52,096 nt of DNA from assembly GCA_977020255.1 (NCBI GenBank), contig CDROCS010001231.1, positions 124,001 to 176,096 of the forward strand, in the 5' to 3' direction. The notes under the pieces are model-generated. The model ran no database searches, was not told where the DNA came from, and saw only the letters and a list, made by a program, of their open reading frames with translations. Position numbers and translations under genes: made by a program. Origin of the DNA: Obrimoposthia wandeli. Lineage: Eukaryota. Every line of letters starts with the position of its first letter. Position 1 is the stretch's first letter. Below are positions 6,401 to 52,096 of the stretch, one piece after another.

Positions 6401-7074
6401 TTATTTGTTAAATACGTTATCAATATATATTTACATTCACATTTGTATAAATTTTATTGTTTACAAGAAAATAGTTATATTTATTTGATAAATACTTCAA
6501 TAAATTCCTCTAAACAATAATTATGTACATTCAAATTTCAAACACTTCTAAGTTTAACAAGAAAATTGTTGTATTTATTTGATGTTTTTATAAAAAATTA
6601 TAAATGAAATATTCAGAGATGATATTTTTTTGTTGTGTAACGTGTGGAAAGTCTTCACTTAATAATACTGTTTTAGGTGAAAATATATACAATTTATATC
6701 CATTTGGTTTCCCATTCCCAGGATTTCGAAAATATATCACCAATGCCATTTCCGAACAGAATATTATTATCTGTTCTGTTGTGTAAATGATCTTTCCAAA
6801 GAATCTGGAAGGAAATTTATCTGGATTTTAAAATCCTAAATACTCATATGTCACCTAATTTGACAATTTTTGAAAATAAATCATAAAAGCTTTTGTAGAT
6901 GTGTTGGGAAAATATATTAACTATTTGTTTAAAAAAGAAAAATAAAAATATAAAATTTTTAAAGAAATAAAAGAAAAAAGGGAATTAATTAATTGAAAAT
7001 TAATTGGGAACTTTCCTTAATTAGGGAAAAGTTCCGATTTTTAAAATTGTGCACTTTGGCATTTTGTATATTCA

Positions 7075-7126
7075 ATCTCCGACGGGAAAAAAGCCCGTTT
7101 CGCCCTGCCGGGCTCATCAGGGAGAT
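7075..7126 (-). ncRNA. Type I hammerhead ribozyme (antisense, U3 of 5' LTR)
   Basis: Minus strand reads AUCUCC-CUGAUGA-GCCC-GGCA-GGGC-GAAA-CGGG-CUUUUUU-CCCG-UC/GGAGAU: intact core, perfect stems I (6 bp), II (4 bp), III (4 bp plus A-U), GUC triplet. Predicted cut between 7081 and 7080. Confidence 0.95.
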
Positions 7127-7129
7127 GGC

Positions 7130-19782: not shown

Positions 19783-19802
19783 ACTTTTATGACCCGGAGG
19801 AT
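19783..19802 (+). promoter_or_regulatory. Polypurine-tract-like plus-strand primer region
   Basis: Purine-rich ...GACCCGGAGGAT immediately before the 3' LTR TG; short and imperfect. Confidence 0.5.
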
Positions 19803-19975
19803 TGTTGGGAAAATATATTAACTATTTGTTTAAAAAAGAAAAATAAAAATATAAAATTTTTAAAGAAATAAAAGAAAAAAGGGAATTAATTAATTGAAAA
19901 TTAATTGGGAACTTTCCTTAATTAGGGAAAAGTTCCGATTTTTAAAATTGTGCACTTTGGCATTTTGTATATTCA

Positions 19976-20027
19976 ATCTCCGACGGGAAAAAAGCCCGTT
20001 TCGCCCTGCCGGGCTCATCAGGGAGAT
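19976..20027 (-). ncRNA. Type I hammerhead ribozyme (antisense, U3 of 3' LTR)
   Basis: Identical to 7075-7126; predicted cut between 19982 and 19981, 12,901 nt from the other site. Confidence 0.95.
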
Positions 20028-20598
20028 GGCTTGTTATCTCTAACTTCGCGGTGGATTCCGCGAAGCCAGAGATAACAATAATAAAGCCAGGGAAAAGAGG
20101 GAAAGATTCCCCTTTCATGTGCCGACGAATATCGTCGACATGTGGTGTTAGTGTGCGCAAGTGCACCATTCACACACACACACACTCACTCAACATTAAC
20201 ACATCACTCAACTCACTCATTCACTCTCACTACTCACTCAATCGCTCACACAATCCCTTGTTCACTCACTCTCCCTACTCACCTATTCTTTGTGCATATG
20301 TGTGTGTTTAATTTGGCATTTTACACCTGCCCAGAATTTTGAATGACGGTGAAATTTCCCGGCTGCACATGTGTGTGTGTGTGTGCAGAGCCGGGAAATG
20401 CCAGTTTCCTCTGCCCAAATCTCTTCTCCACACCATGTCTGGTAGTGATTCGGGCAGGCAGCGAGGATTGTTAATGGGGACTACACATTGCCGGTTTCCC
20501 ACCTGCCCATCTGCTTACAGATTTATAGACACGCAAGAAGGAAATTGCTTCATAAATTTTTCACAATTTATAAAGACAAAATTATTAAATACAAAAAG

Positions 20599-20900
20599 CG
20601 AATTATTGAAACTATTTTGAATTATATATCGAATTTATGCAATCGAATTATTGAAACTATTTTGAATTATATATCGAATTTATGCAATCGAATTATTGAA
20701 ACAATTTTGAATTATATATCGAATCTAGGCAATCGAATTATTGAAACAATTTTGAATTATATATCGAATTTATGCAATCGAATTATTGAAACTATTTTGA
20801 ATTATATATCGAAATTATGCAATCGAATTATTGAAACAATTTTGAATTATATATCGAATCTAGACAATCGAATTATTGAAACTATTTTGAATTATATATT
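20599..20900 (+). repeat. 45-bp tandem array inside 3' LTR
   Basis: Same unit order and variants as in the 5' LTR. Confidence 0.95.
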
Positions 20901-23281
20901 ACAATTTTGAAATACAACTACAATTTTTAGGATCATGATTTTGATTAAATAAATGTTGTTTGCAAGTTTTTGGACTTTTAACAGATGTGTTGGGTTGGGG
21001 TAGTGTCGGATTAAGACATGCGCTTTGGAGGCAGCAGCCCACGACCCTCCAGATATTATATGGCAGTTTTTTTCCCTAAAGCAATATATTGCTTTTAAAA
21101 CATTACTTTACTGTCAGTTCACGTCAACTATCAAGTGTTTTAAGAAAATGAAAGTTCTACAAAGTTGCTCACTTTATTTATTTTGTTTTATCGGCAGATT
21201 ATTTCGTTTTTAATTGACAAGCGGATAGTATATGCAGGTACGTTTGGGTAATAGTAGTTATCTATTATTATTTGATAGCATAAAATTGCGTAAAGCAAAT
21301 ATGTGAATTATACTTTTCTTACCAATTTATAAGTTTTTATTATTTTGTATTACACTGTCAAACTAGTATAATATGTCTGGTAAAATATTGAATTATTTGA
21401 TTATTGTTACGAGTTGATTGAATTTACCGTTGTCGTAAACAGAAGAAAACACCTTATATAATTCGACATATTATACAAAATAAGTAGCTGTATTGTAACA
21501 GCTTACAAAAACATTTTCTCAAAATATCAATTTAGTAATATTGTTATCATAATATCATATTCTTGCTTACCAAAATATTAAAAGAGGTATTTCTAACATT
21601 AACTTTTAGTAATCGGACGTTCAGATAGGATGTCTGCAGAAACTATAGCCCATGGACCTACAATATAATAATCCAGCCCTGTGTTCGGGACAAAAGCTAG
21701 CTACCGAAACCAGAAAATAAATCTGGGGTCTCTCTATTTGCAGGTCACGCATTCTATCCCAGAACTACCGTACATTGTAATTTCACCCGAATTTCTAAAT
21801 GGGGATTATGGACCTAAAATTATCAGTAACATATTTTATCAAATATAAATCTTTTAAATTGTAAAAATTAACAAAGCAAAAGGCGATACATATAAACTGT
21901 GGGGAGAAACTATGTCTCATTATTTTTTAAAATAATTTAATCTATAATTTTTTGAGTATTTAAAAATTATTCGAACTGCCTGGACTATATTATTCAGTAA
22001 TTTATTCCAATGCTATTGCAGATTTTCATGGTAAATGTAACAGTCAATTTCATTTATAAAAGTTTATTGTCCAAAACTGATTATACAAATCAAATGTCGG
22101 TTATTTGTAATACATATATTTCATGGGAGAGGCACAAAAGTATGTCTTTCTTCTGAGACGATTTTTTACACGATAGAAGATAATCAGAACACGAGCTAAT
22201 TGTGAAATAGGATACTATCCTCCTGATTGAATGTTATTTTATATTTATTAAGAGGAAATAATAATTACCCAAAAATTAACTATGGCCTATTGCAAAGTGA
22301 TATGTAGCTTTTGAATTTGTTATTGATTTTTATTTTAAGTCAATAGGTTATATTTATAATTACATAATAGCTCAAAGTGGAAGAGATCTAAATCAAATGG
22401 TGACAGGAAAGAACAAAATTCTTTCAACAATGAAGCTTTCGTTAAAAATGTCTCTCCGGTATTTTGATCACTTTATGAACTATCTTACTTTATGGTCATG
22501 TAATAATCTCAAAATATCAATTGCATGCTAGAAATGAAATTAACTTTCAAAATGATTTAATAAGTTGATTAAATGCCATATTGGCCTCACGTTCCAAAAT
22601 AACCATTCACCTTTACCATCTAAGAAATTAATTATTTTTTGGATGAACCCGTTTACTGTCACACTTCAAAATGCAGCTCATGTGGTTTAAATTTATAGAA
22701 GACTTTGAAGTATAGAAATCACGCAAATCCCTAGACTTTTAATCCTGTAAATAATACTCAAATCCATGCAGTTCCCTCTGCACCGAATGAGTCAACCAAG
22801 ATTTACATGAGGACGCTTTTAAAATATAAATAAAATACCTGATTTTAAAATTTTGTCATTGCCTACATTAACATGAGATTTTATTAATTTGGGAATAAAT
22901 TATTCATTATTCTAGCTTCCAAAGTAAATTTTTTAAACTGCCAGAACTAAGGTAACCTAGAATTGATCTTCAACTTGACTGTTATTTTGATTTTATAACA
23001 CCCCATGAAATTCAATAATAAAACTATTCGACGTTTTGTAGTAATATAGTAATGTAATCTAGAGAATAACAAATAAACAACATGTGCATGTGTAAACAAA
23101 TTTCAGGTAGAAAAGATTACATCATAGCTTGAGGGAGACAGAAATAAGTGTATAGAAACTAGGCATAAATAATCACTGACACACACAAATACAGCCAGTG
23201 ACCAGATTTAATACAAGTGCATCTGGTATTGCACTTGAATGTTTGGTGCACACATAATAAGCTCAGCACATACAAACATTG

Positions 23282-35900: not shown

Positions 35901-38900
35901 TCAGACTTGAGAGACTCTGATCCCTCGGTATCGGTGTCAGCGGAGCCGCCCGTTGTACGTGGGAGGCTCTGCTTGAGTTCAGCTTCAGGCTTACTGACAA
36001 CTCGCCAGTTTGCTGCATGCTGTTGGTAAGTGCTCCGGATTGTCTCGTCCGCAACGCGTGCCTGCAACAAGATGGCATCAGCTAAATATTTGTCAAACTA
36101 TGACTACATACCGTTTAAAATGTAATTCAACTTTATTCTCCGTGGTATTTTATTATCCAAAGTGAAACTGAGTAGAATAAAGTAACCAGGGCAATAATCA
36201 AAGATGATTTTCGGCAATATGTAGTTTATTTATCATTTTTCGTTGATTAAATTTAATTGAGTAAATATTATAGTTGAAACAGTTCAATAAAAAACATAAA
36301 ATATCACTTGTAGAGAAAAATAATTGCACAACTTTTAAAAGAAAACAATTTGATAAAAAAAGAAGAACATGGCAAGACTGCTTTCAGAATCTGCTGAATG
36401 ATTCCCCAATAACAAATCACACGAATGATGTTAAAGCAATAAAGGCCTTTCTAAATGGTGTAGGAAATCTAATACGTACGATAAAAAATTATGAACACGG
36501 TTGAATGTCATTTTTGAAGCATAAAATGCGTTCCACAAAAACCTCCAAAAACCTCCAAAATTCCCAAAATATAAAAAATCACATTCTTCAAAAAAGAATA
36601 TTTTGCGTTCCTCAAATAATGAACTGTCAACAAGCTTCACAAACCAAAAATTGTACGTTCAAAAAAAGAGTTTTATTAAAATAAAAACAAACAAAAAGTT
36701 CTGACCGTATGGTAAAAATGGTGTAATGTATAGATTTCTAGTCAAAGCTGCATCTAAATTGATATCTGGACGACCAACTTTAGACATAATCCCGTGACGT
36801 TATCATCTCTACTTCCGTTCAGATATTTAATCGAATTTGATCCCGTGACAATTCAAATCATAAAATGTCAAGGTCATAAAATACCACATTATCGTCCAAC
36901 TGTATTTAGCTATCAATGACCCTTCAATACAAGTAATTAGGGTTTACCAGAAGCAGTTCAATGTTTGTTGTGCATCGTATGATAAAGTAAAGGTTTGCAG
37001 GACAACTAAGAAGTGGAATGAAGGTTTGGTGAAGGTTGAAAGCAGAGACGGTAGTGGAAAACGAGAAATATTTGATGACAATGGTCACTTAATGGAAATA
37101 AATTCAAAATGTTTAATTTCTGTTGAAAATTGCAAGTGATGCTCAATGTTTAAAATGAACAGTACATCGAATATTTCATCAAATGAACTTCAGGCTATAC
37201 AAGCCTAGAAAGGTACAATTTCTGACATAAGTTTATGAAGCACGAGTAGCATTCACTGAGTGGATCTCAGCTTAACAGGTGACATTCAGTTGCTGTGAGG
37301 AAGTGTTTGGTTCGATACCACTTTATTGCCCTAAGAGTTTGGGTTAGTGTGGTGTTGCTGAAGGAGTTTTACAAAATTCCGTCTTCTTTGAAGGAACTTT
37401 AAACGACCAACGCTAACTTGAGATGCTAATAGATCATGTGGATTCCTCTATTAGAAGGAAGATATACATGTCAAGAATGATATATCAGTAAGATGGAGCT
37501 CAACCACACAAAAAATATTTTTAAGAAACAATTTCATTATGATGTATATGCTTTGTTGAAAATAATGTTCAAGATGGAAGCATTTCCCATAAAATAATAC
37601 AGAGAACTGCTTGTGCAAACTACTTGAAACACTATATAACAATATTTATTGAGATAACATATTTTTCAGATTGATATTATATCTTAATTTCTTTCCATCT
37701 AATTTAGGCTGCATGTGCACATACAAATATTTCTGAAAACTTGTATAAAATTGAAACAAGGTTAGGTTAAAGTCTAGCATTGAGTTATAAGATCTCACCT
37801 GTTCTAACAGCGTTTTGAACTTCTTGGACTCGTTGCGCCACACCTCAGTCAGCTTGCCAGAAGGTGTGCGATTCCAACGATCCTTGAACTGGTCCTTCAA
37901 CTTACTGTCAGAGGTTTCTTCCTCATCTAACATATTGATGGCCTGTAAGTATAGAAAAATACATGTGATGATAGAATCCGTAAACCATGTACCAGTCCAT
38001 TCAATCAGATGTACACTTTTTTCAAACAGCTGTTTTATGATAAACAAGTTAATTGCGGATTTCAGAGTAATTTAAAAGAGCATTTTGAAAGAATTCTAAT
38101 GACTGATTTTAAACAAAAAGTTATTTAAATCAATTAAAAGACAAAATCCCAATTCGAAGATGACTGACCTCATTTAGGATCTCAGTGTTGCGCTGAAGCA
38201 GATCCGGAAGAACATTGATCAAGTTGTCTATCTTGTCTATGCCACCTGCGCTGCGGACCGCGGCAGACTTGACGAGGAGCACCTCCGGTAACTGGTCCCC
38301 GCGACTCTCCTCTACAGCACCGGGAAGACTCAGTGACGTCATTACTCCGTTCAGGACCTCGGTAGCTTCCTGAAATTGACATAGATTAGAGCCTAACTGA
38401 TATCAGATTGGGCAATTAAACCCATAAATTAATAGATTGTGAATATTAAACTAGACGTTAGTTGAGTAGCTTTTACTGCAGTTATTTTTTGGTAATTATC
38501 AGGAAGATCGTATGTTGAATAAACGGGTACACACCTTGAGTCGATAAATTTCGGCTCCGATGAGCTCTCGGCGCTTATTCTCCAGAAACAAGATAGCGGA
38601 GTGCATCGCTAGAGGAACAATTTTGCCAAATAGATCGTGGAAGTTATTGTTGATGGGATTCTCGAGTGGTAACTCTTTGGCAATAACAGCCTTGGCAATG
38701 AGGGACAGAGATGCTGATTCATGGATGGTCTCATGATAGATGAGATTGTTCTCCTTCTCTACCGTCTCCAGATCACGCCGGATCCGGTCTTGCTCAGTAC
38801 GGAACATGAACTTCTGACCTGCACGACTGCTTGACGTTTTCAGGAGCTCTGTCGCTTTCTGCAAAGGGAGAGACAAATCTGGCTTCAATATACGCAGCGG

Positions 38901-41900
38901 AAAGTGACTATAAACCTTATCTCTTTCACATATCGATGCACCAATGAAAGACGGAATGTAGAGTAAACATGCAGACATGGGTGCTCTCAGAAATAGAGCT
39001 TACATTTATTTCTTTAGATATACTGCTTATTTTTATAATTAAGTTTCAATCATGAATTTGATAAATGTTCGATAAAGCTGTTCATTTCTCGAGCATACAT
39101 TTGGGTAATCTTAGTCCAATTCAAGAAAGTAAATGTAGCTCATTTCGAAAGATCTCGATTGCTACTCACTCTCAGTCTGCCAATCATCTCTCCAAAAGCC
39201 TGGTTGGAACCGCACGCCTTGCCCTGATAGTACTCGGCCAGACCATGGTATCCTGCCTGTTTGCCAGCAACTAACGGGATCCAATCCTGAAAGAAAGCAG
39301 GTTTAAATCGACTGTGGCAGCTTTGTCTATGTTGTTGTTAATTATTATCATTAATCATGTTTCGTACTTACCTTAGGCCAAACGGACTTAACAGAATTGA
39401 GCTGCATAAGTTTCAGAGCGTCAGCGTACAGATCTACGACTTGTTGAGTGATTTTGGCCACCATGACATCCTTCATTTAATCTACGTATAACGATCAGAA
39501 GAATGTCAGCAACTGAGGAGGAAACCGAAAAAATTAACACATATGAGTTAGAGGAGATTAAATAACAAACCTCGGACAGCTTTCATGTGAATGAGCTCCT
39601 GGGCCTGAGCCAGCATAAGCGCACCGAGAGTATTGAGTGTATCTGAGTTAAGGTCGACTGTGGGGTCACGCTGAATGATACCGGGTACAGCCACCTTTAG
39701 GTAGGCATAGATGCCAGCCGCTTGCTGCACGAGATAGAATAAGAGGCCAGGTTACAAGATTATCATAACTTGACCTAAGCTGCCTGACCATATTTGACAC
39801 ACCAAATCGCGACACTGCATAATTTACACTTCAAGTCACTGATTTAAACAGCAAATTCATCCAATATTACACATTCATTGATTTTTTTTCTACATTGAGG
39901 AATTTGTAGCTTTTATCTTATTGTGTATAAGTTTTGCTTTTCTTCATAAAAATTATCTTGTCTCATTTTGCAAATGTTTAAAAAGTTTTTAGAATTTTGC
40001 TTATAAAATTAAAAATAAACTAAACATGAATTTGGATTATTTATGGCGTATTTGCGTTCGACAACTTTTTCAAAATAATAGAACGGACGTTCTACAGCAA
40101 TGGACAAGGAAATGACCAGTTAAAAATTATAATAATGTATACAGTAATACCCGAAACAGTGCGGTTCCAAACAATGCGGTTTCACTATAGTGCGAATTTC
40201 GTAAAATATTAGTAAATAAATAAAATATAGAATAAAACTATATTTAATTCTTCAAAAATATCAATATTGATTTACAGATTTATATATTATATTCTTAAAA
40301 CTCACATTTTAGAAATTATTCTTTCATCTGATATTTTCCGAGTCAATATTGCAGAATACCATTATTAAAACAGATTGTATTGAAATGTTACGTCAAACAA
40401 AAGAAAGCACAATGTTGGTCCAAACTAACGACAGTGGCTAACATTAGAAAATAAATTAGATGTTATATATATGAAGATGGTGTATCATTGGCTAAAATTG
40501 CACGCGTTTATAAAATAAATGAGTCATCTGTGCGTGTTATTGTAAAGAAGAAACAACAATATAAAGATCATGGAATTGCTACTGCATCGTACATGAAAAA
40601 AGAATTGCAATAAATAGAGACAAAAACATGCTGAATATGGAACTTTTATTAATTGTAATGAAAAAAAGAATTCAACTCAGTCAACTTAGTATCCAAGAAA
40701 ATGCACGAAATCTGTTTAGCGCAGTTACCACTCAAATGAAAATGAAGGGATACCTCTACGACTACAAATGAAGAAAAATCTTTTAATACAAGCCACAGTT
40801 GGTTCAATCGCTTTAAAGAACGTATAAAATTCATAATGTTAGAATTGTCGGTTAAAGTGCTAGTGCTGATGTAGAAGCAGCCGCAAAAAAATATCCTGAT
40901 GAATTAAAAAAAATATTGAAGATGGTAATACAGTGATCATCAAATATTTAATGTGGATGAAACAGGATTGTTTTGGAAGAAAATGCCTACTCGAACATAT
41001 GTAGCTGAAAAAGAAAAAGCACAGCCGATATATTAACCTCTGAACACAACTTCGTTATTACAGCCGATGGACCAAGGAGTGATCGCAACATTCAAGGCTT
41101 ATTATAGGAGACAAGCTTTTTCTCAATTAATTAAAGTTACGACAGGAGAAAATGCCTTTTCATTAACTGATTTTTTTAAAAGAATTATAATATCAGATTT
41201 GCAATTGAAAATATTGATTCAGCATCGCGTTAAGTTACTTGTTAGCAACATGAGAGGTGTATGATGAAGCTTTAAAAATTATTATGAATGGAGACCCAAA
41301 TGTCGAACACAGCATCCAAGTGCGAAACACTGTTGAAAATAGGATTTGATGCTACAGAGAACTTTATGCCACAAAAACGAAGAAGAAATCAGTACAAACT
41401 TCTTTGTTTAATTATTTTTCTAAACAATAAAAACCTTTCAGTATTCTTTTTGTTTCAATTAATATTTAATTATAATCTTGTTTCATTATCTCTGTTAATG
41501 CTCGTTTTTAATGCATTTAATAACTTTTCATTATTTTATCGATATTTATTCAGTCCGGAACGAATTACTATTAAACTCATTATATAATGCATCAAACAGT
41601 GCGGTTCCGAACAGTGCAGAACAATTCTGGCACGAATTACCCGGGGTATTACTGTATAGTGATATGACTAACCATAATTTATTTATTTTAATGTGTTTTT
41701 TATTATTAATGTTAACAATTTCTTTTAAGATGTCAGATTATTTAGTTAAATGGGCCTTTCAAATTGGGCAAGTTAAGATTCTCAAGGATTTACAATGAAT
41801 CAAAATTGTTATGCGTGTCATTTTTGATTAGATAAAAAGATAGAATACGGTAGATCTAGACAAACTACAGAACGATGCGATAGGACAATTATAAGAACAA

Positions 41901-44228
41901 TTAAAATACATCCTTTGATAGTTTCTCAAGATCTTAATAATCAATTAAATTTAAATATATATACAGAAACTATAAAACGACATTTGCATGAAGTTAAACA
42001 TTACAACACAAAACGTAAACAGAGTTTATCTTAATGAAAACAAAGGAAAACATAGTTCAACGAAACGTTGTATATCACCTGACATTAATTCCAAAGAGAA
42101 TATTTGGTCGATATTCAAACTACGTGTTAGAAGACAAAAACATTCAACGATAATTTATCTAGTTTATCCGACAAATTAATCATAGCATGAACCGATATCA
42201 ATCAAGGAACAATTAAAAGTCTCCATGACAAAAAGACTTTCAAAATTACTTTAAGGAAAAAAATAAAATTATGATTTTTGTATAATTATTATAATTTTAG
42301 CTGCTTTATTATATGAAAATGTATAATTCATCGAAGATTTTTCATAAATTGTGATCCAATAAACTTATGACCACACACGCACACACTAAACAACCGGTGA
42401 AAAAAATGTTCCCATTGCAAACCAGTGAAACAATGATGAAAAACTCAAATACGAACCAAGCGATTACTCCTTGTAGTGTATTCTTTCCAAGCATGAGAAT
42501 AACCAAATTTACATTACTTATAAAAAGGATTGATCTAATTTATTTACATGATCTTCGTTTCTGACAGGAAATGATAATTAACTATGTCTTCCTCAGTACT
42601 TACCTAATCGTTATTCAGTAAATCTTACAAATTATAAAGCCTGTACAATTTTTATATAAACGAATTCCTTTTGTTTCAAATTCTTTTTTTATATTCGCTG
42701 ATTTGAATTTTCTTAGACAAATTTTTGCTTAAAACTAAATATAATCAATAAAATATACAGTTAACACAAAAATATACATATATGACATTGTCACTTTTAG
42801 GCTCGACTTCCATTATTCATTATTTTACAACCCTTCACTATTACAAAGAAGTGAGTAATATTTGCAAATTATCTTTAAAATAAATATGCTGTTGAATAAT
42901 ACATTGAATGAGATTGGTCGATAAATTATCAAATAGAGGATAAAATAAATTTATTGTTTCAAAAATGCTCAGTTTTAAAGTTACATCCTTATTCGTATAA
43001 ACGTCTAAAAATCGAAATTTCATGTTCAATAAATTTGAGAAAGCAACTATAATAGTAGACTGTAAATTCAAATATCTAAATCGAAGAAAGACCGCATTTT
43101 ACTGAGATTAGCCTTAGTTTTTCTTTGGCATATTAAGGAATTCAGAGGAGAGATGAAGACATTCCTAAAGTTGCCGATTTATAAAGTGTATTTGAAAAAT
43201 ATTTTTCATAATTACTAAAGTGGCTCATAATTTAACTTAATTTAGGTTACGTACCATATTTGAACTCCATAATATTTCAGAAGTAGACGTTGATTTCCTG
43301 GTCTGTTAAAATTGCCCTGACAATAAAGATCCATTCGAGCACTAAGTGACCCCAAATTGTCATTGTGTATATCAAATATTTATTTATCAATTAAAATGAT
43401 GTAATAGTTATTCAAATTAGATCAATTTTGCGATAAAATACATAAATTTCGTTATATTTACAGTTACCCATCAATAGTTGCAAAATTGAAGAAAATCTAT
43501 GTATGTTAAGGTAGTAATCATGAGCACACAAATAATGCAAAAACAAACTTCTGGACAGTTAAAGGATTTAAAGATGAAATGTTAGAAATTAATTGATATT
43601 AGTTAGAAATCCTGCGTATGCTTAAATTTAACAATTTATTTATCACATCAAAGTATTGTGCAATAAATATCCAATAAAATCGTTTTATCACAAATATTTT
43701 AAATAAAGAATTAAAAATGAATTAATTATCTAACCTGATAATATTTGGCAGCAGTCTTAAGACCAGATTCATCATTTAAATTCTGACTGTCGGCAACTTG
43801 TGAATAGAGAGAGGCAATATTGAACAAAACGCAAATTCTTTCATATGCACCCGATGCAATCTTTAAAGTTGTCTTTTTACCAAAAAGACTTTCCTTGCTG
43901 AAAGCATCTTCCCACTTAAAATCTATTCTTACATTATTTTCCTCCATCGGTATTTTTGTTTCCAAAGCTACAAACTGATCATGATACCTAAATATTTATA
44001 ACAAAAAATCTGAGAAACTATTTACTTAGTTAAAACAGATAATGCTGACTCATGTTTATCAAATAATTTACTGAGCATTCTATTACGCATATTATTAAAC
44101 TCTGTAAAAGCTGCTGTGTGATTTGTACACTGTTCGTCGCCATATGTATCTTTTACATATGAAGACAATATGGCTGCCATATTTATTTCAAACCCTTTTT
44201 TGCAGGGTACACTTAAAAATTGCGTCAT
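29975..44228 (-). CDS. PDCD6IP: ALIX / programmed cell death 6-interacting protein (Bro1, V domain, proline-rich tail), 14 exons
   Basis: Exons 44228-44026, 43987-43735, 39724-39571, 39481-39372, 39286-39170, 38858-38535, 38369-38169, 37942-37799, 36061-35809, 35649-35326, 35275-35095, 32610-32554, 31092-31015, 30180-29975; all GT-AG and phase-consistent. Motifs FKWEDAF, YERICVLFNIA, KENNLIYHE, LDEEE..D..LK.QF.DRW.RTPS, FARKTE, C-terminal YYPR. Lesions in this sequence: TAA at 39479-39477 and 1-nt losses near 35507 and 35384. Confidence 0.93.
37250..37520 (+). mobile_element. Degenerate Tc1/mariner transposase fragment in an ALIX intron
   Basis: Broken frames giving PLYCPK...CG......VFFEGTLN...LEML and YQ*DGAQPH (QQDGAPPH-like); boundaries approximate. 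Confidence 0.45.
40142..41654 (+). mobile_element. Internally deleted, degenerate Tigger/pogo DNA transposon in ALIX intron 2
   Basis: 11-bp TIR CAGTAATACCC/GGGTATTACTG flanked by TA; broken CENP-B-like HTH (LTLENKLDVI...IARVYKINESSVR), SWFNRFKER, FNVDETGLFWK, LQPMDQGVIATFKAYYRR. Confidence 0.88.
41880..42200 (+). mobile_element. Degenerate Tc1-like transposase fragment
   Basis: ETIKRHLHE and SPDINSKENIWSIFKLRV (SPDLNPIENLW-like); boundaries approximate. Confidence 0.55.
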
Positions 44229-44707
44229 TTATTCAGGGAAAAAATTAGGTAAAAAATTAGAAATGCTAAAACCAAAATAAAAAAGTAAAAAATAGAAAAC
44301 CTTGAATTAATGATATTATGAATTTTACTATTTAACAAACAGTCAATATTTAGATATTATACTACTTTCAAGGATAGATAATACATTTCAAATATATTAT
44401 AAATGCGAAATATGTTTTTTTATAATTAGTCAATAGTTATGGAAAATAGTTTATGAACTTTTAATGCCATTTTAGTTTAACTAATTTTAATTGTAAAATA
44501 TCGTAAAACGTTTACAAAAATAACGTAATTTTTATAAAAATTAGAAATCAAAATCATTCAACTAAGTGAGTGCTATGAACAAATCATATGAAACAATATT
44601 ATTATATAAATGTATAAATTAAATAGAAATCTGATAATAGTGAAAAGAAAAATATGGTTAAATTATGTTGCAAATAAAGTGAAAAATCAATAAATAGTGA
44701 CTATATA

Positions 44708-45439
44708 TGTTAGGATTACAATTTTAAAAAATAAAAATACAATTTAAAAATTTTAATAATTTCTTAATTAGGAAATAACGAGAGAAATTTCCTTAATTAA
44801 GAAAATATTTTAGGGTATGAAATGCACTTTGGCATTTAATAATCAGTTTATTTAGTTCAGTCCCCGACCGGCTTAACCAGTTTCGCCCTACCGGGCTCGT
44901 CAGAGGACGGCAGATTTATCTCTGGCTTCGGTGGGCAAAATTCCCGCGAAGTCAGAGATAAAAATAAAAAATAAAGGTCCACTTACCTGCACACAGTCGC
45001 CCAGGTTGTGCAGAGCTCACCAATTTTCCACATTCTCCTTCCCGGACTACCTTCCCCGGATCCTGACTGCCAAGATACAATATCTTTGTCTCAGACAGTT
45101 TTCCTGTCTGGAGGGAGAGGAAAAATGCAGTTTTCCTCGATCAACAGCAGACCAAACTTCTATCAGCTGCATCTGCCAACGGTCAATGTCAATTTCCCTG
45201 CTGTTATCGAGGTCGCTGCCTGTCCCCTCTCTCTCTCCCATTTGTCTGTTTCTCTTGCCATTAACTAGCGCTGATTTCGGAAGCTGCTGCCAGGATCACG
45301 CTATATGGGAGATATCACCGTGCATTTGTCGCACACTGACTCCTGGATCGATCCTTGGTGGAATTTATATAAAACAATACAACAAATGTGATTGAGTAAT
45401 AGAATTTGAACAAGTGATTTTGATTATTTATTTTCAACA
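44708..45439 (+). mobile_element. Solo LTR (732 bp) of a related family
   Basis: TGTT...AACA termini with TATA duplication (44704-44707 and 45440-45443); shares TGCACTTTGGCATTT, hammerhead, TTATCTCT...AGAGATAA hairpin, TATAAA (45368) and TGATTTTGATTA with the full-length LTR. Confidence 0.85.
44860..44908 (-). ncRNA. Type I hammerhead ribozyme (antisense in solo LTR)
   Basis: Minus strand GUCCU-CUGACGA-GCCC-GGUA-GGGC-GAAA-CUGG-UUAAG-CCGG-UC/GGGGAC; core intact, stem I needs a 1-nt bulge. Confidence 0.88.
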
Positions 45440-48400
45440 TATATACTTTAGAATTTAACATTGTAAAATATTACGCTGGATAACAAACGTCTACAACAAA
45501 TTCATTTTCCCTTACTTTACCCTGTGTTACAAAATAAATAAACTAAATGTTTCACAGTAATATTAAAAAACAATTATCAATTATTTTAAGTTCGTTTACA
45601 TTTAGCAACATTTCAATAGTTGTGTAATAAATAAAATGAAACGATGTTTTACTATTTTAGTCATAAAGAATGATATTGACAATATATTGGAGTCAGGATT
45701 TATTCATTCTGTTCCCCAGCGGCAGATAATCAAAATAAAGGTATTTATGAAGAAAATAATACACTTTGAAAGATCAGATATAGCTAAAAAACTTTTGCAA
45801 CAAATAACTTTAAGCCATTGGATACAACATATATACACAAAGTAAAAATCGAAATCAGCTTTTAAATTAAATTTAAATTTAAAAAACATGTAGAATAAGA
45901 TAAAAAATACATTTTTAAAGAAAGATTTCTTAAATCAAGCAGACGTATTATAATGTGTGTTTATTTGATTGTTTAGTTACTTTTCACTATTTTGCAAGAC
46001 AAAAATAACACTCGCCGGCTGTATTTTGAAAAAACATCGAAAAATTCTGTTGCATAGTTATGTAAGAACTTGGTCAACAAAGTGTGCTAGTTTAAAGGTT
46101 TAAAAATTTTTCGTATCACTGCTCCAGAACCCTTTATGTTTAAAAAATCATGATTGTTAAACCAAAAATTAAATACAAAATCAAAAAGTTTAAAAAAACC
46201 AAAAAGGTCAATTACTGGGCTTCATTCCTCTAATAAGTTTAAGATACTGTGCAAAATATAGATAAAAGACAAATAACATTTATAAAATTTTAAAAAAAGT
46301 AAAATAATTTTTAAATGAAAACTTTTATTTTTGTAAATAGTTCTGATAAAGAAATATTGTTCAATGTTCGTGGACAGTTATTTAAATTTGAGAATCTCGC
46401 ATTTTCAGAATATACAATAATTATTTCTTTTTTAAATGACTTATAACACTTATGTAAATTAGTTAAAATTGCAATTATTTTTAATGTTTTTTTTATTTTT
46501 TATAAATATTTTTTTTAATACATTTAAATTTTATTTAAAAATGATACGATAAAAATTTGAAAAAGTGTTATTATATTCTTTGAGATTTGTTGTAATAGTA
46601 AGTTAATTTTGGTTTTGATAAAAAATACACTAAGGAAGTTCGTATTAAATTTAAATTATATTAATTTTTCACAATCAACATTGATGTATTTTAACAAAAT
46701 AATATTTTAGTCAATACATATCAAATTATAAAAATAATAGATTTTTTTAATTTATTTTTAAAAATAAATAATGACAAAATTTATTTAAATTAAAATATTT
46801 GAATTTAAGACTTTGTTTAGTTATAAATTTCAAATTGTTTCAAATACAAAAATAAGAGACATAAAATTGTTGTAATTAAGATTTACTAAATTTTGGTTTC
46901 AAATTAAAGATTTAGAACGAATAAGATTTGAAATGAAAATAAGAAAATGTTTATAAAAGTATTTAAAAAAATAATTTATTCAATAACATGCTTTCATTTC
47001 AGAACTATGTACAATTATTGAGTTTTTAAATATAAAGAAATATAGAAATAAACATATTTTATGGTACATAGTCATCATGTTATAATTTATTAAACCAATA
47101 TGTATTTATTAATTTTTAGTAAATTTTCTACATTAACATTTATCATTCTAAAAATTAAAATAAAAATATATCATTAAATCAAAGAAATAATGCCTAAAAG
47201 TGATCTCAACCAGGATTTTGTTGATTCAGAATATATACTACAGCAAATATTCAGATAGTATATTAGTTATTTCATAATTGACATTTCATTTTTATAAATT
47301 TTAATATTTTATATAAACCTTACATATAATTATTTAAATTTTTATATAAATGTGTACAAGTTTAAATTCACTAAAGTAGCATTTTAACTTATAGCTCCTA
47401 TTTAAAGACACTATAAGCATTTCTGAGCACAATTTAGAACCAAATTTTATAATATTGCATTATGCGTTGGTTACACAAATATGTATATTGCAGAAATAGA
47501 AGAATCTCTAGGACGTTTCGGACTTTCAAGAATTTTTCTTTTTTATAAATTTAAGATTTTAAGATATTTTGTGTCAATTTAGTTTAATTGAAGATGGTGT
47601 TCGTTATTTTGGGTATTTTTATGAAAAATTCGATATGAGACAATTTTTAGTTTTTTTTAATCAATATTTTAATCAATATTGAAAAAATTCAGAAAATTTA
47701 AAAGAAACTAGTTTTTTTAAAGTTGAGTCAATTTAAAAAAAAATAAAGATTTTAATAAAAATTATAAGAAAAAAAAAGATTTAAATAATTTCAGAGTTAA
47801 AAATATGATATGAAAATATCAAAACAACTATAAAAACTGCTTCCTCTAATACACTAATCATGATTTCGTATGTGATCTGAGTTTGGCACTGGAGCAAAGC
47901 ATATACATGAGAAAAACACCATTACAATTTCCTTGAATAAAACATAGCTAATGGAAGAGTTGAGGTGAACCGCAAAAATACCGTCCATGCACCAAGTGTC
48001 ACAAGAGTCAAGACATTGTAAGTGGGAGCTCGGTTGGGAATTTGACGTGAAGTTCCTCAGTACTTAGGCCATTATCATACGTGAAATTGCACTTAAAATA
48101 ATTTATAGGCAGTTTTCATGAATCATGCTAAATGCATCTAATTGCATAATTCCCTTTAATATTACCACAACCATACATTAAAGTGACTAAATAACAAAAG
48201 TTTTTTAAAACAAGATAATGAATAAAGACATAATTTAACTAATACATTCATATTTATGAAATGAGTATGATAGGCTTCACTGTAGTTCGGTAAAAAACAG
48301 GCCACATGGTATCGTGTATGAATTGCAATTAAAATCATTAACTAAAAGTTTCAACAGATGATAAAAGGATGAATCATAATTATTCTCGTAATTTACTCAA

Positions 48401-48899
48401 ATTATGTAACTATTATATTGATAATAATTGTGTATCCCATTTTGATGAAGAAGTTGTATATCTTGAATATCAAAGATGAAATGTAGATTCAAATCTAAAT
48501 TTGTCATAAACATTTCAAAAATAACCTAATAGAACGAACATGACCTTTAACTAAACTAAATTATTTGAAAACTAACTATTTTATAAATTGAAGTCCTAAA
48601 AAAGCATAAATCTTAAATGTTGTTTGAAGTCTTGTTTAAATATTATATAATCCGTGAAACGACAGAATTTAAATATATTTTGCTCCAAGCCATATTCTTG
48701 GATTTGTGATTGGACTACAAGCTATTTCGGCTATGAAGGAATTGAGAGCATCAGTATTTTCGATGGGACTTCAAATGTGGAGGTGGATTAGTGAGATCAA
48801 AATGAAGGCCGATCTGCTGGATTTGGAGAAAAATTAAGTTCAATTATTCGCTGAGATTGAAACCTAAATGATGGTTATGAATTTGTAAAGCCGAAAAGA

Positions 48900-49620
48900 A
48901 TGACGCAGAATCAATTATGAAGCGATTATGAGATACATGTGTGATGTGGTCAGTTTCGAGGTGTATAAGTGATTCAGCCAGAAGAAGCGGCAACTCAGAG
49001 AATCAGTCGATCGGTTCGCGTCGAATTTAAAAGTCTGACATCAAAGATCGGTATGGCAGATAATATTGTTGAATTGGCGCTAGTCGCTGGCCAGCCTTCA
49101 GACGCTTCAGAAGCTCTGAAAATTTCGATGAAGTGTGGAAACTCTTCCTTAGAGCAAGTTATAGCTGAAGCCCGAACTAGATGACATAAAAAAATTGGAA
49201 TCTGAAGGTATCTTCCAAGTTGGAGCCTGTCGCAGCTCTTCATTATAGAAAAAGGATAATTAGTTCAGGAATCAAACGCTTCCGATGAGATGAATGCCAT
49301 ATTTCTAGAACTGCTATGGAAGAAAAACACAGATGCTAACATCTAGAATATAGTTGGTCACTTGGCCCGCATGTCCCAAAACGAGAATCAAAAACTATTA
49401 AGGAGTCCGTAGTGCGCCAGCGCATTCTTGATGATACGGCGTATATTCCAACAGTTATCATCCATGTTGGAACTAAAACTTTAAGAGCAATGGTTGATGG
49501 GATGTTCGAGACTATTCTTTTGATGTTGACAGTTAAAGAATCAATCATAAATTTTGATCATAACATAACATTAATGAACGGAGAAAGAATACCCGAGGAA
49601 GTGTATGGAATGTGAAGTTA
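48900..49620 (+). mobile_element. Degenerate gag/protease remnant of another LTR element
   Basis: Broken frames with VGHLARM (knuckle remnant) and VIIHVGTKTLRAMVDG (protease-like, DTG degraded); boundaries approximate. Confidence 0.4.
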
Positions 49621-49795
49621 ATGTCACGGACGCAAATTGGCTAAATTGCATCATTTCTCGTATAGCACTCATGATACGTTATTGAATGGATGTTGTCAAT
49701 ATACTGTGGAATTTGGATAAGTGGTGATGGAAGGAATAAGAGTTTGACCAATTCAATGATGTTTGTGCAGTATCAGATTCATCGAATCCGGTTGG

Positions 49796-49819
49796 ATATA
49801 TATATATATATATATATAT
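49796..49819. repeat. (TA)n microsatellite
   Basis: Uninterrupted TA run of about 12 units. Confidence 0.9.
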
Positions 49820-49828
49820 GACTTCAAT

Positions 49829-50210
49829 CATACCTTCAAACGTTCAAGTTATAACTGAGTCCGACCCTTTCATATATATTAACGACCACAACCTTTTAGA
49901 TGTATTGATTAAGCATACGGTCACAACCATACCTTTCGTCTTCAAGTCAAAACTGAGTCCGACCTTTTTCATATAGGATTGACTACAACCTTGGGTGTGT
50001 TGGCCAACCATGATGGTCATGACCATACCTTCAAATCCTTCAAATCAAACTGAGTCCGGACCCTTTCATCTATGGACGACCACAACTTTAGATGTTGATT
50101 AAGTATAGATATTATGACCATACCTTCAAACTTTCAAGTCAAAACCGAGTCCGACCCTTTCATCTATGGACGACCACAACCCTTAGGTGTAAGTTGGCCA
50201 ACAATAGATT
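49829..50210 (+). repeat. Diverged ~96-bp tandem repeat, 4 copies in ABAB order
   Basis: CATACCTT at 49829, 49928, 50024, 50119; shared AACTGAGTCCGACCCTTTCAT...GACCACAAC; alternating tails (TTAGATGT..GATTAAG versus GGTGT..TTGGCCAAC). Confidence 0.85.
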
Positions 50211-50394
50211 GTTACAGCCACTAAATCTTCAAACCTTTCTGAGCCTGATCCTTATGAAAAGGGCAAGACACCCATATGGGGAGTCAACATATACCCTTGT
50301 TGGAAATTAATTAAATAAATAAATAATTTTAAGTCAATTTTAATTGATATTTAATACTTATCAAAAATGCCAACAATTTGGAGGTTTTCGTTCA

Positions 50395-50445
50395 GCCTCC
50401 GACGGGTGGTCCTGTTTCGCCCTTACCGTGGACTCGTCAGAAGGC
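50395..50445 (-). ncRNA. Type I hammerhead ribozyme (antisense in third LTR)
   Basis: Minus strand GCCUU-CUGACGA-GUCC-ACGGUAA-GGGC-GAAA-CAGG-ACCA-CCCG-UC/GGAGGC; core intact, one A-C mismatch in stem III, 1-nt bulge in stem I. Confidence 0.82.
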
Positions 50446-50965
50446 GGCGAGATAGGGTGGTTAGCGGAATGGATTTATCTCGAGTAAATCTGACATTTCT
50501 CCCATACTTTATGACTGAGATTGCCGCCCAGATGTTGCCATTTTTCTCTCTCTCGGGCAGCTTCTAAATCTCTCTGCCAACTGCACTGTCGGCGGTTCCT
50601 CCTCTGATCCTCAATCGGTTCCAATGTGTACAATCAATCAGCAACAAGATATACCAGCAGATCTAACTGACGTTGCCACAACAAATCCGAATAGCAACAT
50701 CTGCCTCTCCTGACAACAGATACCAATTTTCCCCTACCGGCTGATGTCTGCCAATCTCTAATCACAGACGAGTCGACAACATAGCAGCGGTATGCTTATC
50801 TCACCGGACTATCCCGACTATGTCAGTATGTGTGTGACACGTCACCATTTCAAACTTCTCTGTCCCTCGCATACTTTGTCGTTATATAAAACTGCATGAT
50901 TTCTGTCAGGCTGACACAACAAAAAGCAACACAGAAATTTCTGGAAAATATATATTTTAAGAATT

Positions 50966-51297
50966 TTATCCACTTTCAATTTATTTGAAATTAGTTATCC
51001 ACTTCTCAATTTGTTTGAAACCAGTTATCCACTTCACCTATTTGAAATCAGTTATCCACTTCTCAATTTGTTTGAAACCAGTTATCCACTTTCGTTCTAT
51101 TTGAAATCAGTTATCCATCACTTCAATTTGTTTGAAACCAGTTATCCACTTCTCAATTTGTTTGAAACCAGTTATCCACTTCTCAATTTATTTGAAACCA
51201 GTTAACCACTTCTAACGGTTTTTGAAACTAGTTATTCACTTCTCAATTTATTTGAACCAGTTATCCAATTTTCAATTTGTTTGAAACCATTTACCCA
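50966..51297 (+). repeat. 30-bp tandem array (~11 copies) inside third LTR
   Basis: Unit TTATCCACTTCTCAATTTGTTTGAAACCAG with scattered variants. Confidence 0.92.
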
Positions 51298-52096
51298 ATT
51301 ATGAAAGTTTGTCGAGTTACAATTGTTGACTTCGTCCCACAAATTTAACTTATTAACAATTGTGAGAGCTCGACTAAGAATAGAACAAGGATTGAGCGTA
51401 GGTCATTTATTTGTTTTTATGTTGATAATATTTAGTTTATTGTAATAGTTTATTTTAAAAGAAAATTGAATTGATTTTGCTTTACATTTTAGTTTTATTG
51501 TCACATTTGACATTAAAATTTTAATTATATTCATTGTAAATTTATTTAAATTTTGATAGTGATTCATTTTATTTTTTCAATATTTAGTTGTAATTTATTT
51601 TTTGGATTTTATGTTAATTTGTTTACTTTTTGTAATTATTTAATTTAATTTGATTGTTAGACATTCATTTCCGATTATTATTTTTTTGTATATATACATT
51701 CTAATTTGCTTTAGTCTATATTTTATTACATATATATAATTAATAATCTGAACATACAGATCTACAACATTTTCTTGGTTATTTGAACTCATTTGAAAAT
51801 TATCTTAGTTTTACAACCTTAAAAAGAGCTTACAATTTCAAAAAAACTTATAACATTTTATATTTTAAAATTTGTGATTCGTATAAGTATCCGAACTTTT
51901 ATATTACCTGATTTGATATATTAGATATAAAATACTAAACATTGAGTGTTTGAGGTGTCATAGCTTATAATAAGCCTCGTAGGTCAAAAATACATTTTCT
52001 ACTACATAGAAGTAAGAGGTGTTTAAAGCTTGCGCACAAGCCTCGTCGGTCCAAAAATACATTTTCATAATTTTCATATAGTTTGATAGGGCTAGG

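What the first reader, a model, noticed from the sequence alone, without database searches (positions are those of the whole stretch)
50395..50445. Third LTR family with the same antisense hammerhead
Again about 100 bp from the LTR start, on the minus strand, with new stem sequences (stem II GUCC/GGGC with a G-U pair, larger loop ACGGUAA containing GGUA, stem I GCCU/AGGC). Three distinct families within 52 kb suggest the trait is ancestral and widespread in this genome.
Basis: partly seen in the sequence, partly recalled or inferred. Interest (0 to 1): 0.85.

Follow-up and report, generated by a model that had tools for sequence, protein, structure and literature searches.

The report
Damaged backwards hammerhead in a retroelement LTR
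The motif is a real copy of a self-cutting hammerhead RNA that thousands of virus-like jumping genes in this animal carry backwards in their end repeats, but this copy is damaged, or badly assembled, and probably cuts poorly.

Summary
Window 50392-50449 (minus strand) holds a complete type I hammerhead core (CUGACGA, GAAA, GUC site). It lies 95-152 nt inside a genuine LTR (50298-51358). That LTR recurs as same-strand pairs 12-13.5 kb apart and as solo LTRs with 4-bp target duplications. A full sister element on contig C4797 carries glycoprotein, PR-RT-RH-IN and exonuclease genes, all on the strand opposite the ribozyme. Next to retroelement genes the motif was on the opposite strand in 25 of 25 cases.

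The family's commonest form is a canonical type I hammerhead. Across families the helices covary (96.8% of cells paired, 7 of 15 pairs changed on both sides). About 3,900 exact motif matches occur genome-wide; reversed-pattern controls gave 0.

The "new" stem II and large loop are private to this copy. It lost one C before UGACGAG, gained 3 nt in loop II and has an A·C mismatch in helix III. Its ribozyme fold is 8.6 kcal/mol worse than its best fold. It sits in the error-rich last 2 kb of a contig that duplicates C4797.

No RNA data exist, so cleavage and function are inferred. The scan had already flagged this phenomenon in this genome and window. I found no description of it in the literature.

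The parts
50392..50449 (-). Type I hammerhead motif, this copy. It has a complete catalytic core, a 4-bp helix II with one G.U pair, a 7-nt loop II, and helix III with an A.C mismatch. Helix I pairs only when shifted by one position.
   Evidence: R1 covariance model gives 57.0 bits, against 85.6 for the commonest family form. The hammerhead-compatible fold is -10.0 kcal/mol against an MFE of -18.6.
50400..50401 (-). Predicted self-cleavage site: 3' of C17 (50401) and 5' of G1.1 (50400) on the minus-strand RNA.
   Evidence: Position of GUC|G. Inferred from the hammerhead numbering rule, not shown experimentally.
50448..50482 (-). Hairpin directly 5' of the ribozyme on the minus-strand RNA, with arms CGAGAUA / UAUCUCG. 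Families 1 and 2 have longer hairpins with GAGAUA/UAUCUC arms at the same place.
   Evidence: by eye. In most other family 3 copies the arms pair less well.
50298..51358 (+). 5' LTR of family 3, running from TGTTGG to TTATTAACA. The ribozyme lies in the presumed U3 region.
   Evidence: At least 45 genome matches, including same-strand pairs 12-13.5 kb apart. Boundaries were set by the LTR pair of the C4797 element, which has TSD CCCT. Solo LTRs carry 4-bp TSDs AATG, ATAT and CATA.
50883..50891 (+). TATA-like box (TATATAAAA), the likely sense promoter. It would place the ribozyme about 430-490 nt upstream, inside U3.
   Evidence: Sequence. A similar box lies in the family 2 LTR near 45365. Inferred only.
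50966..51297 (+). Array of roughly 30-bp tandem repeats in the 3' part of the LTR.
   Evidence: Self-BLAST; sequence.
51359..51374 (+). Primer-binding-site-like sequence just after the LTR. It is degraded here (ATTGTGAGAGCTCGAC). The sister copy has ATTGGTGAGCTCGAC and family 1 has ATTGGTGAGCCCGA.
51375..52096 (+). Start of the element's internal region, cut off by the end of contig C1231.
   Evidence: Aligns to the C4797 element up to 52083. Locus L001 stops at the contig end.
44857..44912 (-). Family 2 hammerhead. It sits in a solo LTR (44708-45439) flanked by TATA/TATA.
   Evidence: R1 score 72.1 bits.
7072..7129 (-). Family 1 hammerhead in the 5' LTR of a complete plus-strand element (6902-20983, TSD GATG). 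Its twin in the 3' LTR is at 19973-20030.
   Evidence: The minimum-free-energy fold is the canonical three-helix hammerhead.

Best explanation
**What it is.** Window 50392-50449 (minus strand) is one copy of a type I hammerhead ribozyme. A large clade of roughly 13-kb, glycoprotein-carrying Ty3/gypsy-like retroelements in this animal carries this ribozyme antisense in the U3 part of both LTRs. Here it lies in the 5' LTR of an element that the contig end cuts off.

**How it would work (inferred).** The ribozyme can form only in RNA copied from the strand opposite the element's genes. In such antisense transcripts it would fold co-transcriptionally and cut itself at GUC|G. The cut falls 100-230 nt from the LTR's outer (5') edge, and it happens once in each LTR.

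**Most likely consequence.** Antisense transcripts are severed just before they enter the element's body at the 3' LTR, which removes the cap. They are severed again just before they leave at the 5' LTR, which removes the tail. This would disable antisense RNA that could otherwise pair with the genomic RNA and trigger silencing.

**Shown and not shown.** The motif, its LTR context, its orientation, its abundance and its covariation are shown. Transcription, cleavage and the biological role are inferred.

**This copy.** It keeps the whole catalytic core. It has private changes: one C lost before UGACGAG, 3 nt added to loop II, an A.C mismatch in helix III and one nucleotide lost from loop III. 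As assembled it is probably a weak or dead ribozyme. These changes are either recent decay or, more likely, assembly noise at the contig end.
For: - **Core and position:**
- **The LTR is real:** same-strand pairs 12-13.5 kb apart; TSD CCCT and a PBS in the full C4797 element; solo LTRs with 4-bp TSDs.
- **Orientation:** the C4797 element has its glycoprotein, PR-RT-RH-IN and exonuclease genes all opposite the motif. The neighbouring retroelement gene was on the opposite strand in 25 of 25 cases across families 2 and 3. Family 1 shows the same in the window.
- **The family form is canonical:** its hammerhead fold is -22.8 kcal/mol against an MFE of -23.9. For family 1 the hammerhead fold is the MFE.
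- **Covariation:** 96.8% of cells paired, 7 of 15 pairs changed on both sides, covariation score reached in 0 of 500 shuffles, slid controls at most 56% paired.
- **Strand asymmetry:** 43 G.U cells against 7 A.C cells.
- **Conservation:** blastn finds no significant similarity between the family 3 LTR and the other two families; the covariance model still matches the 56-nt ribozyme in all three.
- **Abundance:** 2,105 plus 1,823 exact motif matches, reversed controls 0, with many same-strand pairs about 13 kb apart.
- **This copy is defective:** 57 bits, rank 46 of 49; ribozyme fold 8.6 kcal/mol above the MFE.
- **Contig-end noise:** the window and C4797 differ by 0.1-0.8% substitutions at 43212-47004, but by 2-8% substitutions and 3-8% indel events in the last 2 kb. 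The indels are mostly 1-3-nt deletions in the window. At 46990 all read contigs carry the C4797 letter.
Against: - No RNA evidence at all. No RNA run exists for this organism in the index, and the runs found are DNA contigs. Antisense transcription and cleavage are therefore unproven.
- Within family 3 the ribozyme is not more conserved than its flanks. Pairwise diversity is 0.056 against 0.024 for the rest of the LTR. Selection on inserted copies is therefore not visible; the motif is CpG-rich, which may explain the excess.
- Rfam's curated hammerhead models do not reach threshold on any of these motifs.
- In the C7 form the core can pair with the cleavage site (UGACG/CGUCG), an alternative fold slightly more stable than the ribozyme fold.
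- A single cut near the LTR edge leaves most antisense sequence intact, so the proposed benefit is only an argument.
- No relative with the motif was found outside this genome.
Confidence: 0.6

Rival explanations
1. Retrozyme-like excision. The two antisense ribozymes, one per LTR, cut a read-through antisense transcript into a unit-length RNA of one LTR plus the internal region, about 12-13 kb. [quoted passage not shown] A host RNA ligase would circularise it, as in plant LTR retrozymes but on the opposite strand.
For: Same-strand motif pairs 11-15 kb apart are very common. The geometry matches that of LTR retrozymes, where cuts in both LTRs delimit a unit RNA (PMC4918200 and PMC7761336). Helix III has 5 bp, which is compatible with cleavage as a monomer.
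Against: No RNA data. No genomic copies were seen that begin or end at the cleavage site. Known hammerhead circles are 0.17-1 kb. An antisense circle has no PBS in the right sense for reverse transcription.
Confidence: 0.15
2. Passenger relic. The ribozyme module was captured once, for instance from a Penelope-like element or a retrozyme. It may then have spread between LTR families by recombination. It persists only because the families are young and high-copy, with no function for the retroelement.
For: Within family 3 the motif evolves no more slowly than its flanks. Copies are very similar to each other (one search returned its 150-hit limit, nearly all at the same top score). Type I hammerheads are common in animal repeats (PMC3088659). 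A second hammerhead class exists in this genome.
Against: The family 3 LTR shows no blastn-detectable similarity to the other two families, yet its ribozyme core is intact. Stems I and III differ by compensating changes. Orientation (25 of 25) and position (95-228 nt from the LTR start) are fixed in all families. The G.U excess is strand-specific.
Confidence: 0.15
3. Sense-strand element. The conserved GC-rich block acts as DNA, for example as a U3 enhancer or binding site, or as a structure in the 3' part of the plus-strand genomic RNA. The hammerhead resemblance on the other strand would be incidental.
For: The block lies in U3 upstream of a TATA-like box. It is the GC-rich island of an AT-rich LTR (GC 0.6-0.73, against about 0.3 overall).
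Against: The unpaired, invariant positions spell the hammerhead core exactly. There are 43 G.U cells against 7 A.C cells, so the helices are better on the minus strand. The three helices covary in the hammerhead register only.
Confidence: 0.05

Closest known systems
Plant LTR retrozymes (Cervera, Urbina & de la Pena 2016, PMC4918200)
   Same: A hammerhead ribozyme is embedded in both LTRs of an element with 4-bp target site duplications, a PBS next to the LTR, and Ty3/gypsy-type termini. Two cuts would delimit a unit-length RNA.
   Different: Retrozymes carry type III hammerheads in the sense orientation. They are non-coding, non-autonomous elements whose self-cleaved circular RNAs are about 0.6-1 kb, and they occur in plants. 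Here the ribozyme is type I and antisense, in protein-coding elements of about 13 kb in an animal.
Metazoan non-LTR retrozymes (Cervera & de la Pena 2020, PMC7229834; Li et al. 2026 preprint, 10.64898/2026.07.22.740005)
   Same: A type I hammerhead with a stable helix III, as in invertebrate retrozymes. High copy number in an animal genome.
   Different: Those are 170-400-nt tandem repeats without LTR, PBS or PPT. The ribozyme is in the sense of the expressed circular RNA, and they are linked to Penelope-like elements. Here the motif is single-copy within each true LTR and antisense to the genes.
Penelope-like element and Terminon hammerheads (Cervera & de la Pena 2014, PMC4209133)
   Same: Type I hammerheads located in the terminal repeats of an autonomous animal retroelement.
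   Different: PLE ribozymes are minimal, lack helix III and are thought to act as dimers. They lie in pseudo-LTRs of elements with a PLE-type RT and GIY-YIG endonuclease. Here helix III has 5 bp and the element encodes PR, RVT_1, RNase H and rve integrase.
HDV-like ribozymes at the 5' end of non-LTR retrotransposons (R2, L1Tc; cited in PMC7761336 and PMC3383444)
   Same: A self-cleaving ribozyme built into a retrotransposon to process transcripts that run across the element's boundary.
   Different: A different ribozyme class, in the sense orientation. It trims the element's own RNA from upstream read-through. Here the ribozyme can act only on the opposite strand.

Membership tests
Hammerhead ribozyme | Invariant catalytic core: C3 U4 G5 A6 N7 G8 A9, G12 A13 A14, the A15.1-U16.1 pair, and H17 at the cleavage site. 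| tested here: met
   CUGACGA, GAAA, A...U and GUC are all present at 50392-50449 on the minus strand.
Hammerhead ribozyme | Three helices around the core with helix I open (type I), supported by covariation. | tested here: met
   Family level: 96.8% of cells paired, 7 of 15 pairs changed on both sides, covariation score reached in 0 of 500 shuffles, slid controls at most 56%. The family 1 MFE is the hammerhead fold. The Hammerhead_3 (type III) topology suggested by Rfam's weak hits is wrong.
Hammerhead ribozyme | [quoted passage not shown] This is the screening rule of Perreault et al. 2011 (PMC3088659). | tested here: not met
   This copy: helix I pairs only one position out of register, leaving G1.1 unpaired. 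In register it forms two G.U pairs followed by mismatches (+0.6 kcal/mol). Helix III has an A.C mismatch. The rule is met in the sister copy L002 and in the commonest form L004.
Hammerhead ribozyme | Score at or above the gathering threshold of a curated Rfam hammerhead model. | tested here: not met
   No hits at gathering threshold. No hit for this copy at E up to 10. No hit for the commonest form at E up to 1. Families 1 and 2 reach about 24 bits against a threshold of 48.5 on the type III model.
Hammerhead ribozyme | Site-specific self-cleavage that leaves 2',3'-cyclic phosphate and 5'-OH ends. | not testable with these tools
   No RNA runs are available. The runs that could be laid are DNA contigs.
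Plant-type LTR retrozyme | Hammerhead inside LTRs that are flanked by 4-bp TSDs, with a PBS next to the LTR. | tested here: met
Plant-type LTR retrozyme | Type III hammerhead in the sense of the element's transcript, in a small non-coding, non-autonomous element. | tested here: not met
   The motif is type I. It is antisense in 25 of 25 cases. The elements are about 13 kb and encode glycoprotein, PR-RT-RH-IN and an exonuclease.
Metazoan non-LTR retrozyme | Type I hammerhead repeated in short tandem units (170-400 nt), without LTR, PBS or PPT. | tested here: not met
   Type I is met, but there is one motif per LTR, spaced about 13 kb apart, with a PBS and TSDs present.
Penelope-like element | Minimal type I hammerhead lacking helix III, in pseudo-LTRs of an element with a PLE-type RT and GIY-YIG endonuclease. 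| tested here: not met
   Helix III has 5 bp in the family form. Pfam finds RVT_1, RT_RNaseH, rve and an aspartyl protease, and no GIY-YIG domain.
Ty3/gypsy-like LTR retrotransposon (the host element) | Paired LTRs running TG...CA, 4-bp TSD, a PBS after the 5' LTR, and domain order PR-RT-RNaseH-IN. | tested here: met
   Sister element C4797:247030-260348. Family 1 element 6902-20983 with TSD GATG. For the window's family 3 copy only the 5' LTR and about 740 nt of the interior exist before the contig ends.

The most novel reading that the evidence does not exclude
The paired antisense hammerheads excise and allow circularisation of a full unit-length (about 12-13 kb) antisense RNA of an autonomous, envelope-bearing retroelement. 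This would be a giant antisense counterpart of the retrozyme circle, acting as a stable regulatory or replicative RNA form of the element.
Probability: 0.1. Interest if true: 0.9.

Novelty: new variant of a known kind. Interest (0 to 1): 0.6.

Why it matters
Hammerhead ribozymes are known in plant LTR retrozymes (type III, sense), animal tandem retrozymes and Penelope-like elements (type I, sense). The papers I could search, up to 2026, describe no hammerhead in the true LTRs of autonomous animal LTR retrotransposons, and none with obligate antisense polarity.

If the family-level motif cleaves in vivo, a virus-like retroelement would be encoding a ribozyme aimed at RNA made from its own opposite strand. 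That points to a way for such an element to control antisense transcripts, double-stranded RNA and silencing. It is directly testable, because the predicted cut site is known to the nucleotide and thousands of copies exist.

For this particular locus the lesson is more sober. The copy adds a third LTR family to the case. Its distinctive stems, however, are defects, or sequencing noise at a contig end, and should not be counted as natural variation.

Tried and rejected
- **Rfam scans** at gathering and E-value thresholds: nothing usable. The weak Hammerhead_3 hits on families 1 and 2 have the wrong topology.
- **Expression and cleavage from public reads:** two run searches found only five runs, all from one sample. 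They behave as DNA, because unique intergenic bins are evenly covered. Laying them gave no RNA information and no begin or end pile-ups.
- **Extending the contig:** C1231 ends at the window's end. The sister contig C4797 was used instead.
- **Selection within the family:** pairwise diversity of the 56-nt motif is higher than that of the rest of the LTR (0.056 against 0.024). There is no sign of constraint on inserted copies.
- **The trait in other organisms:** the word-based search with the exonuclease ORF found nothing. The exhaustive search gave two relatives at 31-36% identity on short Logan contigs. One has IN and exonuclease adjacent, but neither has a hammerhead within the available 100-980 nt downstream.
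- **Metagenome and viral scans** with the 24-nt core plus stem II: 15 and 4 contigs respectively. All are 55-72% GC, lack retroelement genes, and carry unrelated prokaryote or phage type I hammerheads.
- **Organism identification** through a host exon in the ESM Atlas: uninformative.
- **Chance match:** rejected.
- **Type III topology:** rejected, because stem III would have only 2 bp.

Full report
**1. The observation**

On the minus strand, window 50392-50449 carries every invariant position of the hammerhead core:
- CUGACGA (C3 to A9, with the free position N7 = C);
- GAAA followed by C (G12 to A15.1, C15.2);
- a GUC cleavage triplet.

It also has a 4-bp helix II (GUCC/GGGC) closed by ACGGUAA, and a short hairpin helix III. 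The topology is type I. Helix III is closed by a loop and helix I is open-ended.

Rfam's weak type III alignments on the two sister motifs in the window (about 24 bits, E about 1) use the wrong topology, because they would leave helix III with only 2 bp. Rfam reports nothing for this copy at any threshold tried.

The match is not chance:
- A loose core pattern occurs 5 times in the window against 0.45 expected.
- A stricter pattern occurs 2,105 times with U at N7 and 1,823 times with C at N7 in the 1.35-Gb genome.
- The same patterns read backwards occur 0 times.

**2. The segment is an LTR, and the motif is antisense**

The first 663 nt of 50298-51358 have at least 45 matches in the genome. 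These include six same-strand pairs 12.3-13.5 kb apart.

One pair, C4797:247030-260348 on the minus strand, was read in full:
- The two repeats are 97.6% identical, run from TGTTGGG to TTATTAACA, and are flanked by CCCT on both sides.
- The 5' repeat is followed by a PBS-like ATTGGTGAGCTCGAC.
- Between the repeats lie a Monjiviricetes-type fusion glycoprotein, aspartyl protease, RT, RNase H, integrase and an RNase T-type exonuclease.
- All of these are on the strand opposite the hammerhead.

Three further copies are solo LTRs with 4-bp target duplications AATG, ATAT and CATA.

I also ran tblastn with the family 1 element's proteins against the 71 loci fetched around LTR and hammerhead hits. 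This gave 25 cases of a retroelement gene within 2.5 kb of a motif. In all 25 the gene is on the other strand, including loci of family 2.

In the window the motif lies 95-152 nt from the LTR start. The corresponding distances are 150-205 nt in family 2 and 171-228 nt in family 1. The contig ends at the window's end, so this element's own interior and 3' LTR do not exist in the assembly.

**3. Three families, one module**

| Family | LTR in the window | Status |
|---|---|---|
| 1 | 6902-8080 and 19803-20983 | Complete element, TSD GATG |
| 2 | 44708-45439 | Solo LTR, flanked by TATA |
| 3 | 50298-51358 | 5' LTR, cut off by the contig end |

All three LTRs start TGTT(G/A)GG and end ACA. Families 1 and 3 share the PBS.

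Families 1 and 2 align at 67% identity over about 266 nt around the module. Family 3 shows no blastn-detectable similarity to either. The 56-nt ribozyme is nevertheless found in all of them by a covariance model built here.

Across 36 distinct sequences:
- 96.8% of pair cells are standard pairs.
- 7 of 15 pairs show changes on both sides. An example is stem I AUCUCC/GGAGAU against GCCUUC/GGAGGC, and there are further examples in stems II and III.
- No shuffle out of 500 reaches the covariation score.
- Sliding the partner by 1-3 columns drops pairing to 32-56% (seed alignment).

This alignment was fitted to the model, which favours the structure somewhat.

G.U cells outnumber A.C cells 43 to 7, so the helices belong to the minus-strand RNA. 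The genome listings show at least seven helix III variants on the same core.

**4. This particular copy is defective or mis-assembled**

The commonest family 3 form (for example L004:2029-2084) has an in-register 6-bp stem I, stem II GCCC/GGGC with loop GGCA, and a 5-bp helix III.

The window copy differs in five ways:
- one C of the CC before UGACGAG is missing;
- C10.2 has become U;
- loop II has 3 extra nucleotides;
- G15.3 has become A;
- loop III has lost one nucleotide.

The consequences are measurable:

| Measure | Window copy | Comparison |
|---|---|---|
| R1 score | 57.0 bits (rank 46 of 49) | 85.6 bits for the commonest form |
| Best hammerhead-compatible fold | -10.0 kcal/mol | -22.8 for L004 |
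| Minimum free energy | -18.6 kcal/mol | -23.9 for L004 |

For family 1 the hammerhead fold is the minimum-free-energy fold. Under the screening rule of Perreault et al. 2011 (mispairs next to the core disqualify a candidate), this copy would be rejected as a cryptic mutant.

The copy is also not an independent insertion. Window 43212-52083 is collinear with C4797, including the family 2 solo LTR 5.6 kb upstream and the same satellite flank and insertion point.

- Over 43212-47004 the two contigs differ by only 0.1-0.8% substitutions.
- In the last 2 kb of the contig they differ by 2-8% substitutions and 3-8% indel events per 250 nt. These are mostly 1-3-nt deletions in the window.
- At 46990 all read contigs carry the C4797 letter rather than the window's.
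- The C4797 sister copy (L002) shares only the C10.2-to-U change and is otherwise canonical, at 83.6 bits.

The "new stem II and larger loop" are therefore private to an error-rich contig end. I cannot tell decay from assembly error without better reads.

**5. Mechanism**

Shown: a conserved, covarying, strand-specific hammerhead sits at a fixed place and polarity in both LTRs of thousands of element copies.

Inferred: only antisense transcripts can contain it, and they would cut themselves at GUC|G.
- In the 3' LTR the site lies after U5, R and most of U3 in the antisense direction. Any transcript that starts in or beyond that LTR would lose its capped 5' part just before it enters the element's body.
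- In the 5' LTR the cut comes just before the transcript leaves the element.

I therefore favour a device that disables antisense RNA. That includes read-through transcripts and LTR antisense-promoter transcripts, which could otherwise form double-stranded RNA with the genomic RNA.

Rivals:
- a retrozyme-like unit-length antisense RNA that is circularised;
- a functionless passenger module;
- a sense-strand DNA or RNA element.

Against a strong selection claim, within family 3 the motif is more variable than the rest of the LTR (0.056 against 0.024). This probably reflects its CpG richness and the neutral evolution of inserted copies. No RNA data could be found.

**6. What is known**

| Known system | Hammerhead type and polarity | Context |
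|---|---|---|
| Plant LTR retrozymes (PMC4918200) | Type III, sense | LTRs of small non-coding elements |
| Animal retrozymes (PMC7229834; 2026 preprint) | Type I, sense | Tandem repeats without LTRs, linked to Penelope-like elements |
| Penelope-like elements and Terminons (PMC7761336) | Minimal type I, sense | Pseudo-LTRs |

Four full-text searches found no report of a hammerhead in true LTRs of autonomous animal LTR retrotransposons, nor of one with fixed antisense polarity. I therefore class it as a new variant of a known kind, namely ribozyme-bearing retroelements.

The scan had already noted this phenomenon in this genome, including in this same window. This report adds:
- the LTR proof for family 3;
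- the 25-of-25 orientation test;
- the genome counts with controls;
- the demonstration that the local copy's peculiar stems are private defects.

I built no family consensus of the LTR or provirus. All comparisons are pairwise or to named natural copies.

Noticed in passing
window 43212-52083 and G000:C4797:~258500-267666 (minus strand; loci L064, L032, L031): The end of contig C1231 is collinear with part of contig C4797, so it is either an allelic haplotig or a redundant assembly. Agreement is at least 99% in substitutions up to about 47000. It then falls to about 90% in the last 2 kb, mainly through small indels. At 46990 the read contigs agree with C4797 and not with the window.
   Followed up: partly
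window 44708-45439 (solo LTR) and 38499-38978 (minus-strand exon): The family 2 solo LTR has its hammerhead on the minus strand, the same strand as a BRO1-domain host exon about 6 kb away. If the LTR lies in that gene's intron or 5' region, the ribozyme would be in the sense of the host pre-mRNA.
   Followed up: no
window 49829-50297: A tandem repeat of about 98 bp lies directly upstream of the family 3 LTR. It is extremely abundant in the DNA runs: summed word depth is about 1.7e5 in bin 50100-50299, against about 6 for unique DNA in the same run. The element is inserted in a major satellite, at the same point as the C4797 copy.
   Followed up: partly
window 9119-13405, 15444-17666 and 18420-19592 (family 1 element 6902-20983): The retroelement carries a Monjiviricetes-type fusion glycoprotein (PF24664, E 7e-90) in one reading frame between the gag-like part and the protease. 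It also has a separate RNase T/DEDDh exonuclease ORF just before the 3' LTR. The C4797 family 3 element has the same layout.
   Followed up: partly
L075 (Logan SRR10294826) and L076 (Logan SRR22824324): The closest relatives of the exonuclease ORF outside this genome (31-36% identity) lie on short AT-rich contigs from other sequencing runs. L075 has an integrase fragment directly upstream of the exonuclease, as here. No hammerhead was found in the little flanking DNA available.
   Followed up: partly
L077-L095 (metagenome and IMG/VR contigs): The exact 24-nt string of core plus stem II and loop II (CUGAYGAG CCC GGCA GGG CGAAAC) also occurs in type I hammerheads on high-GC (55-72%) prokaryote or phage contigs that carry no retroelement genes. 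This could be convergence or an old shared ribozyme lineage.
   Followed up: partly
genome listings (for example G000:C18:215866-215907, C36:86500-86541): A second hammerhead class is present, with stem II UCC-GUAA-GGA and a loop containing AAAGUGC. It does not fit the LTR-type helix III. It may belong to tandem retrozymes or Penelope-like elements of this genome.
   Followed up: no
genome listing, G000:C46:6215-37064: Same-strand LTR-type hammerheads are spaced only 6.7 kb apart, twice. This suggests shorter, possibly non-autonomous, derivatives of the 13-kb elements.
   Followed up: no
L004:2070-2100 (equivalent to window 50375-50400, minus strand): In family 3 the 3' strand of stem I (GGAGG) can instead pair with a CCUCC 13 nt downstream. 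The 3' cleavage product could thus fold its 5' end into a hairpin, which would hinder re-ligation. Alternatively this pairing competes with ribozyme folding. It is not seen in family 1.
   Followed up: no
window 7558-8131 and 20461-21034; 50966-51297: The LTRs carry internal tandem arrays downstream of the TATA-like box: 45-bp units in family 1 and roughly 30-bp units in family 3. Copy number varies between copies.
   Followed up: no
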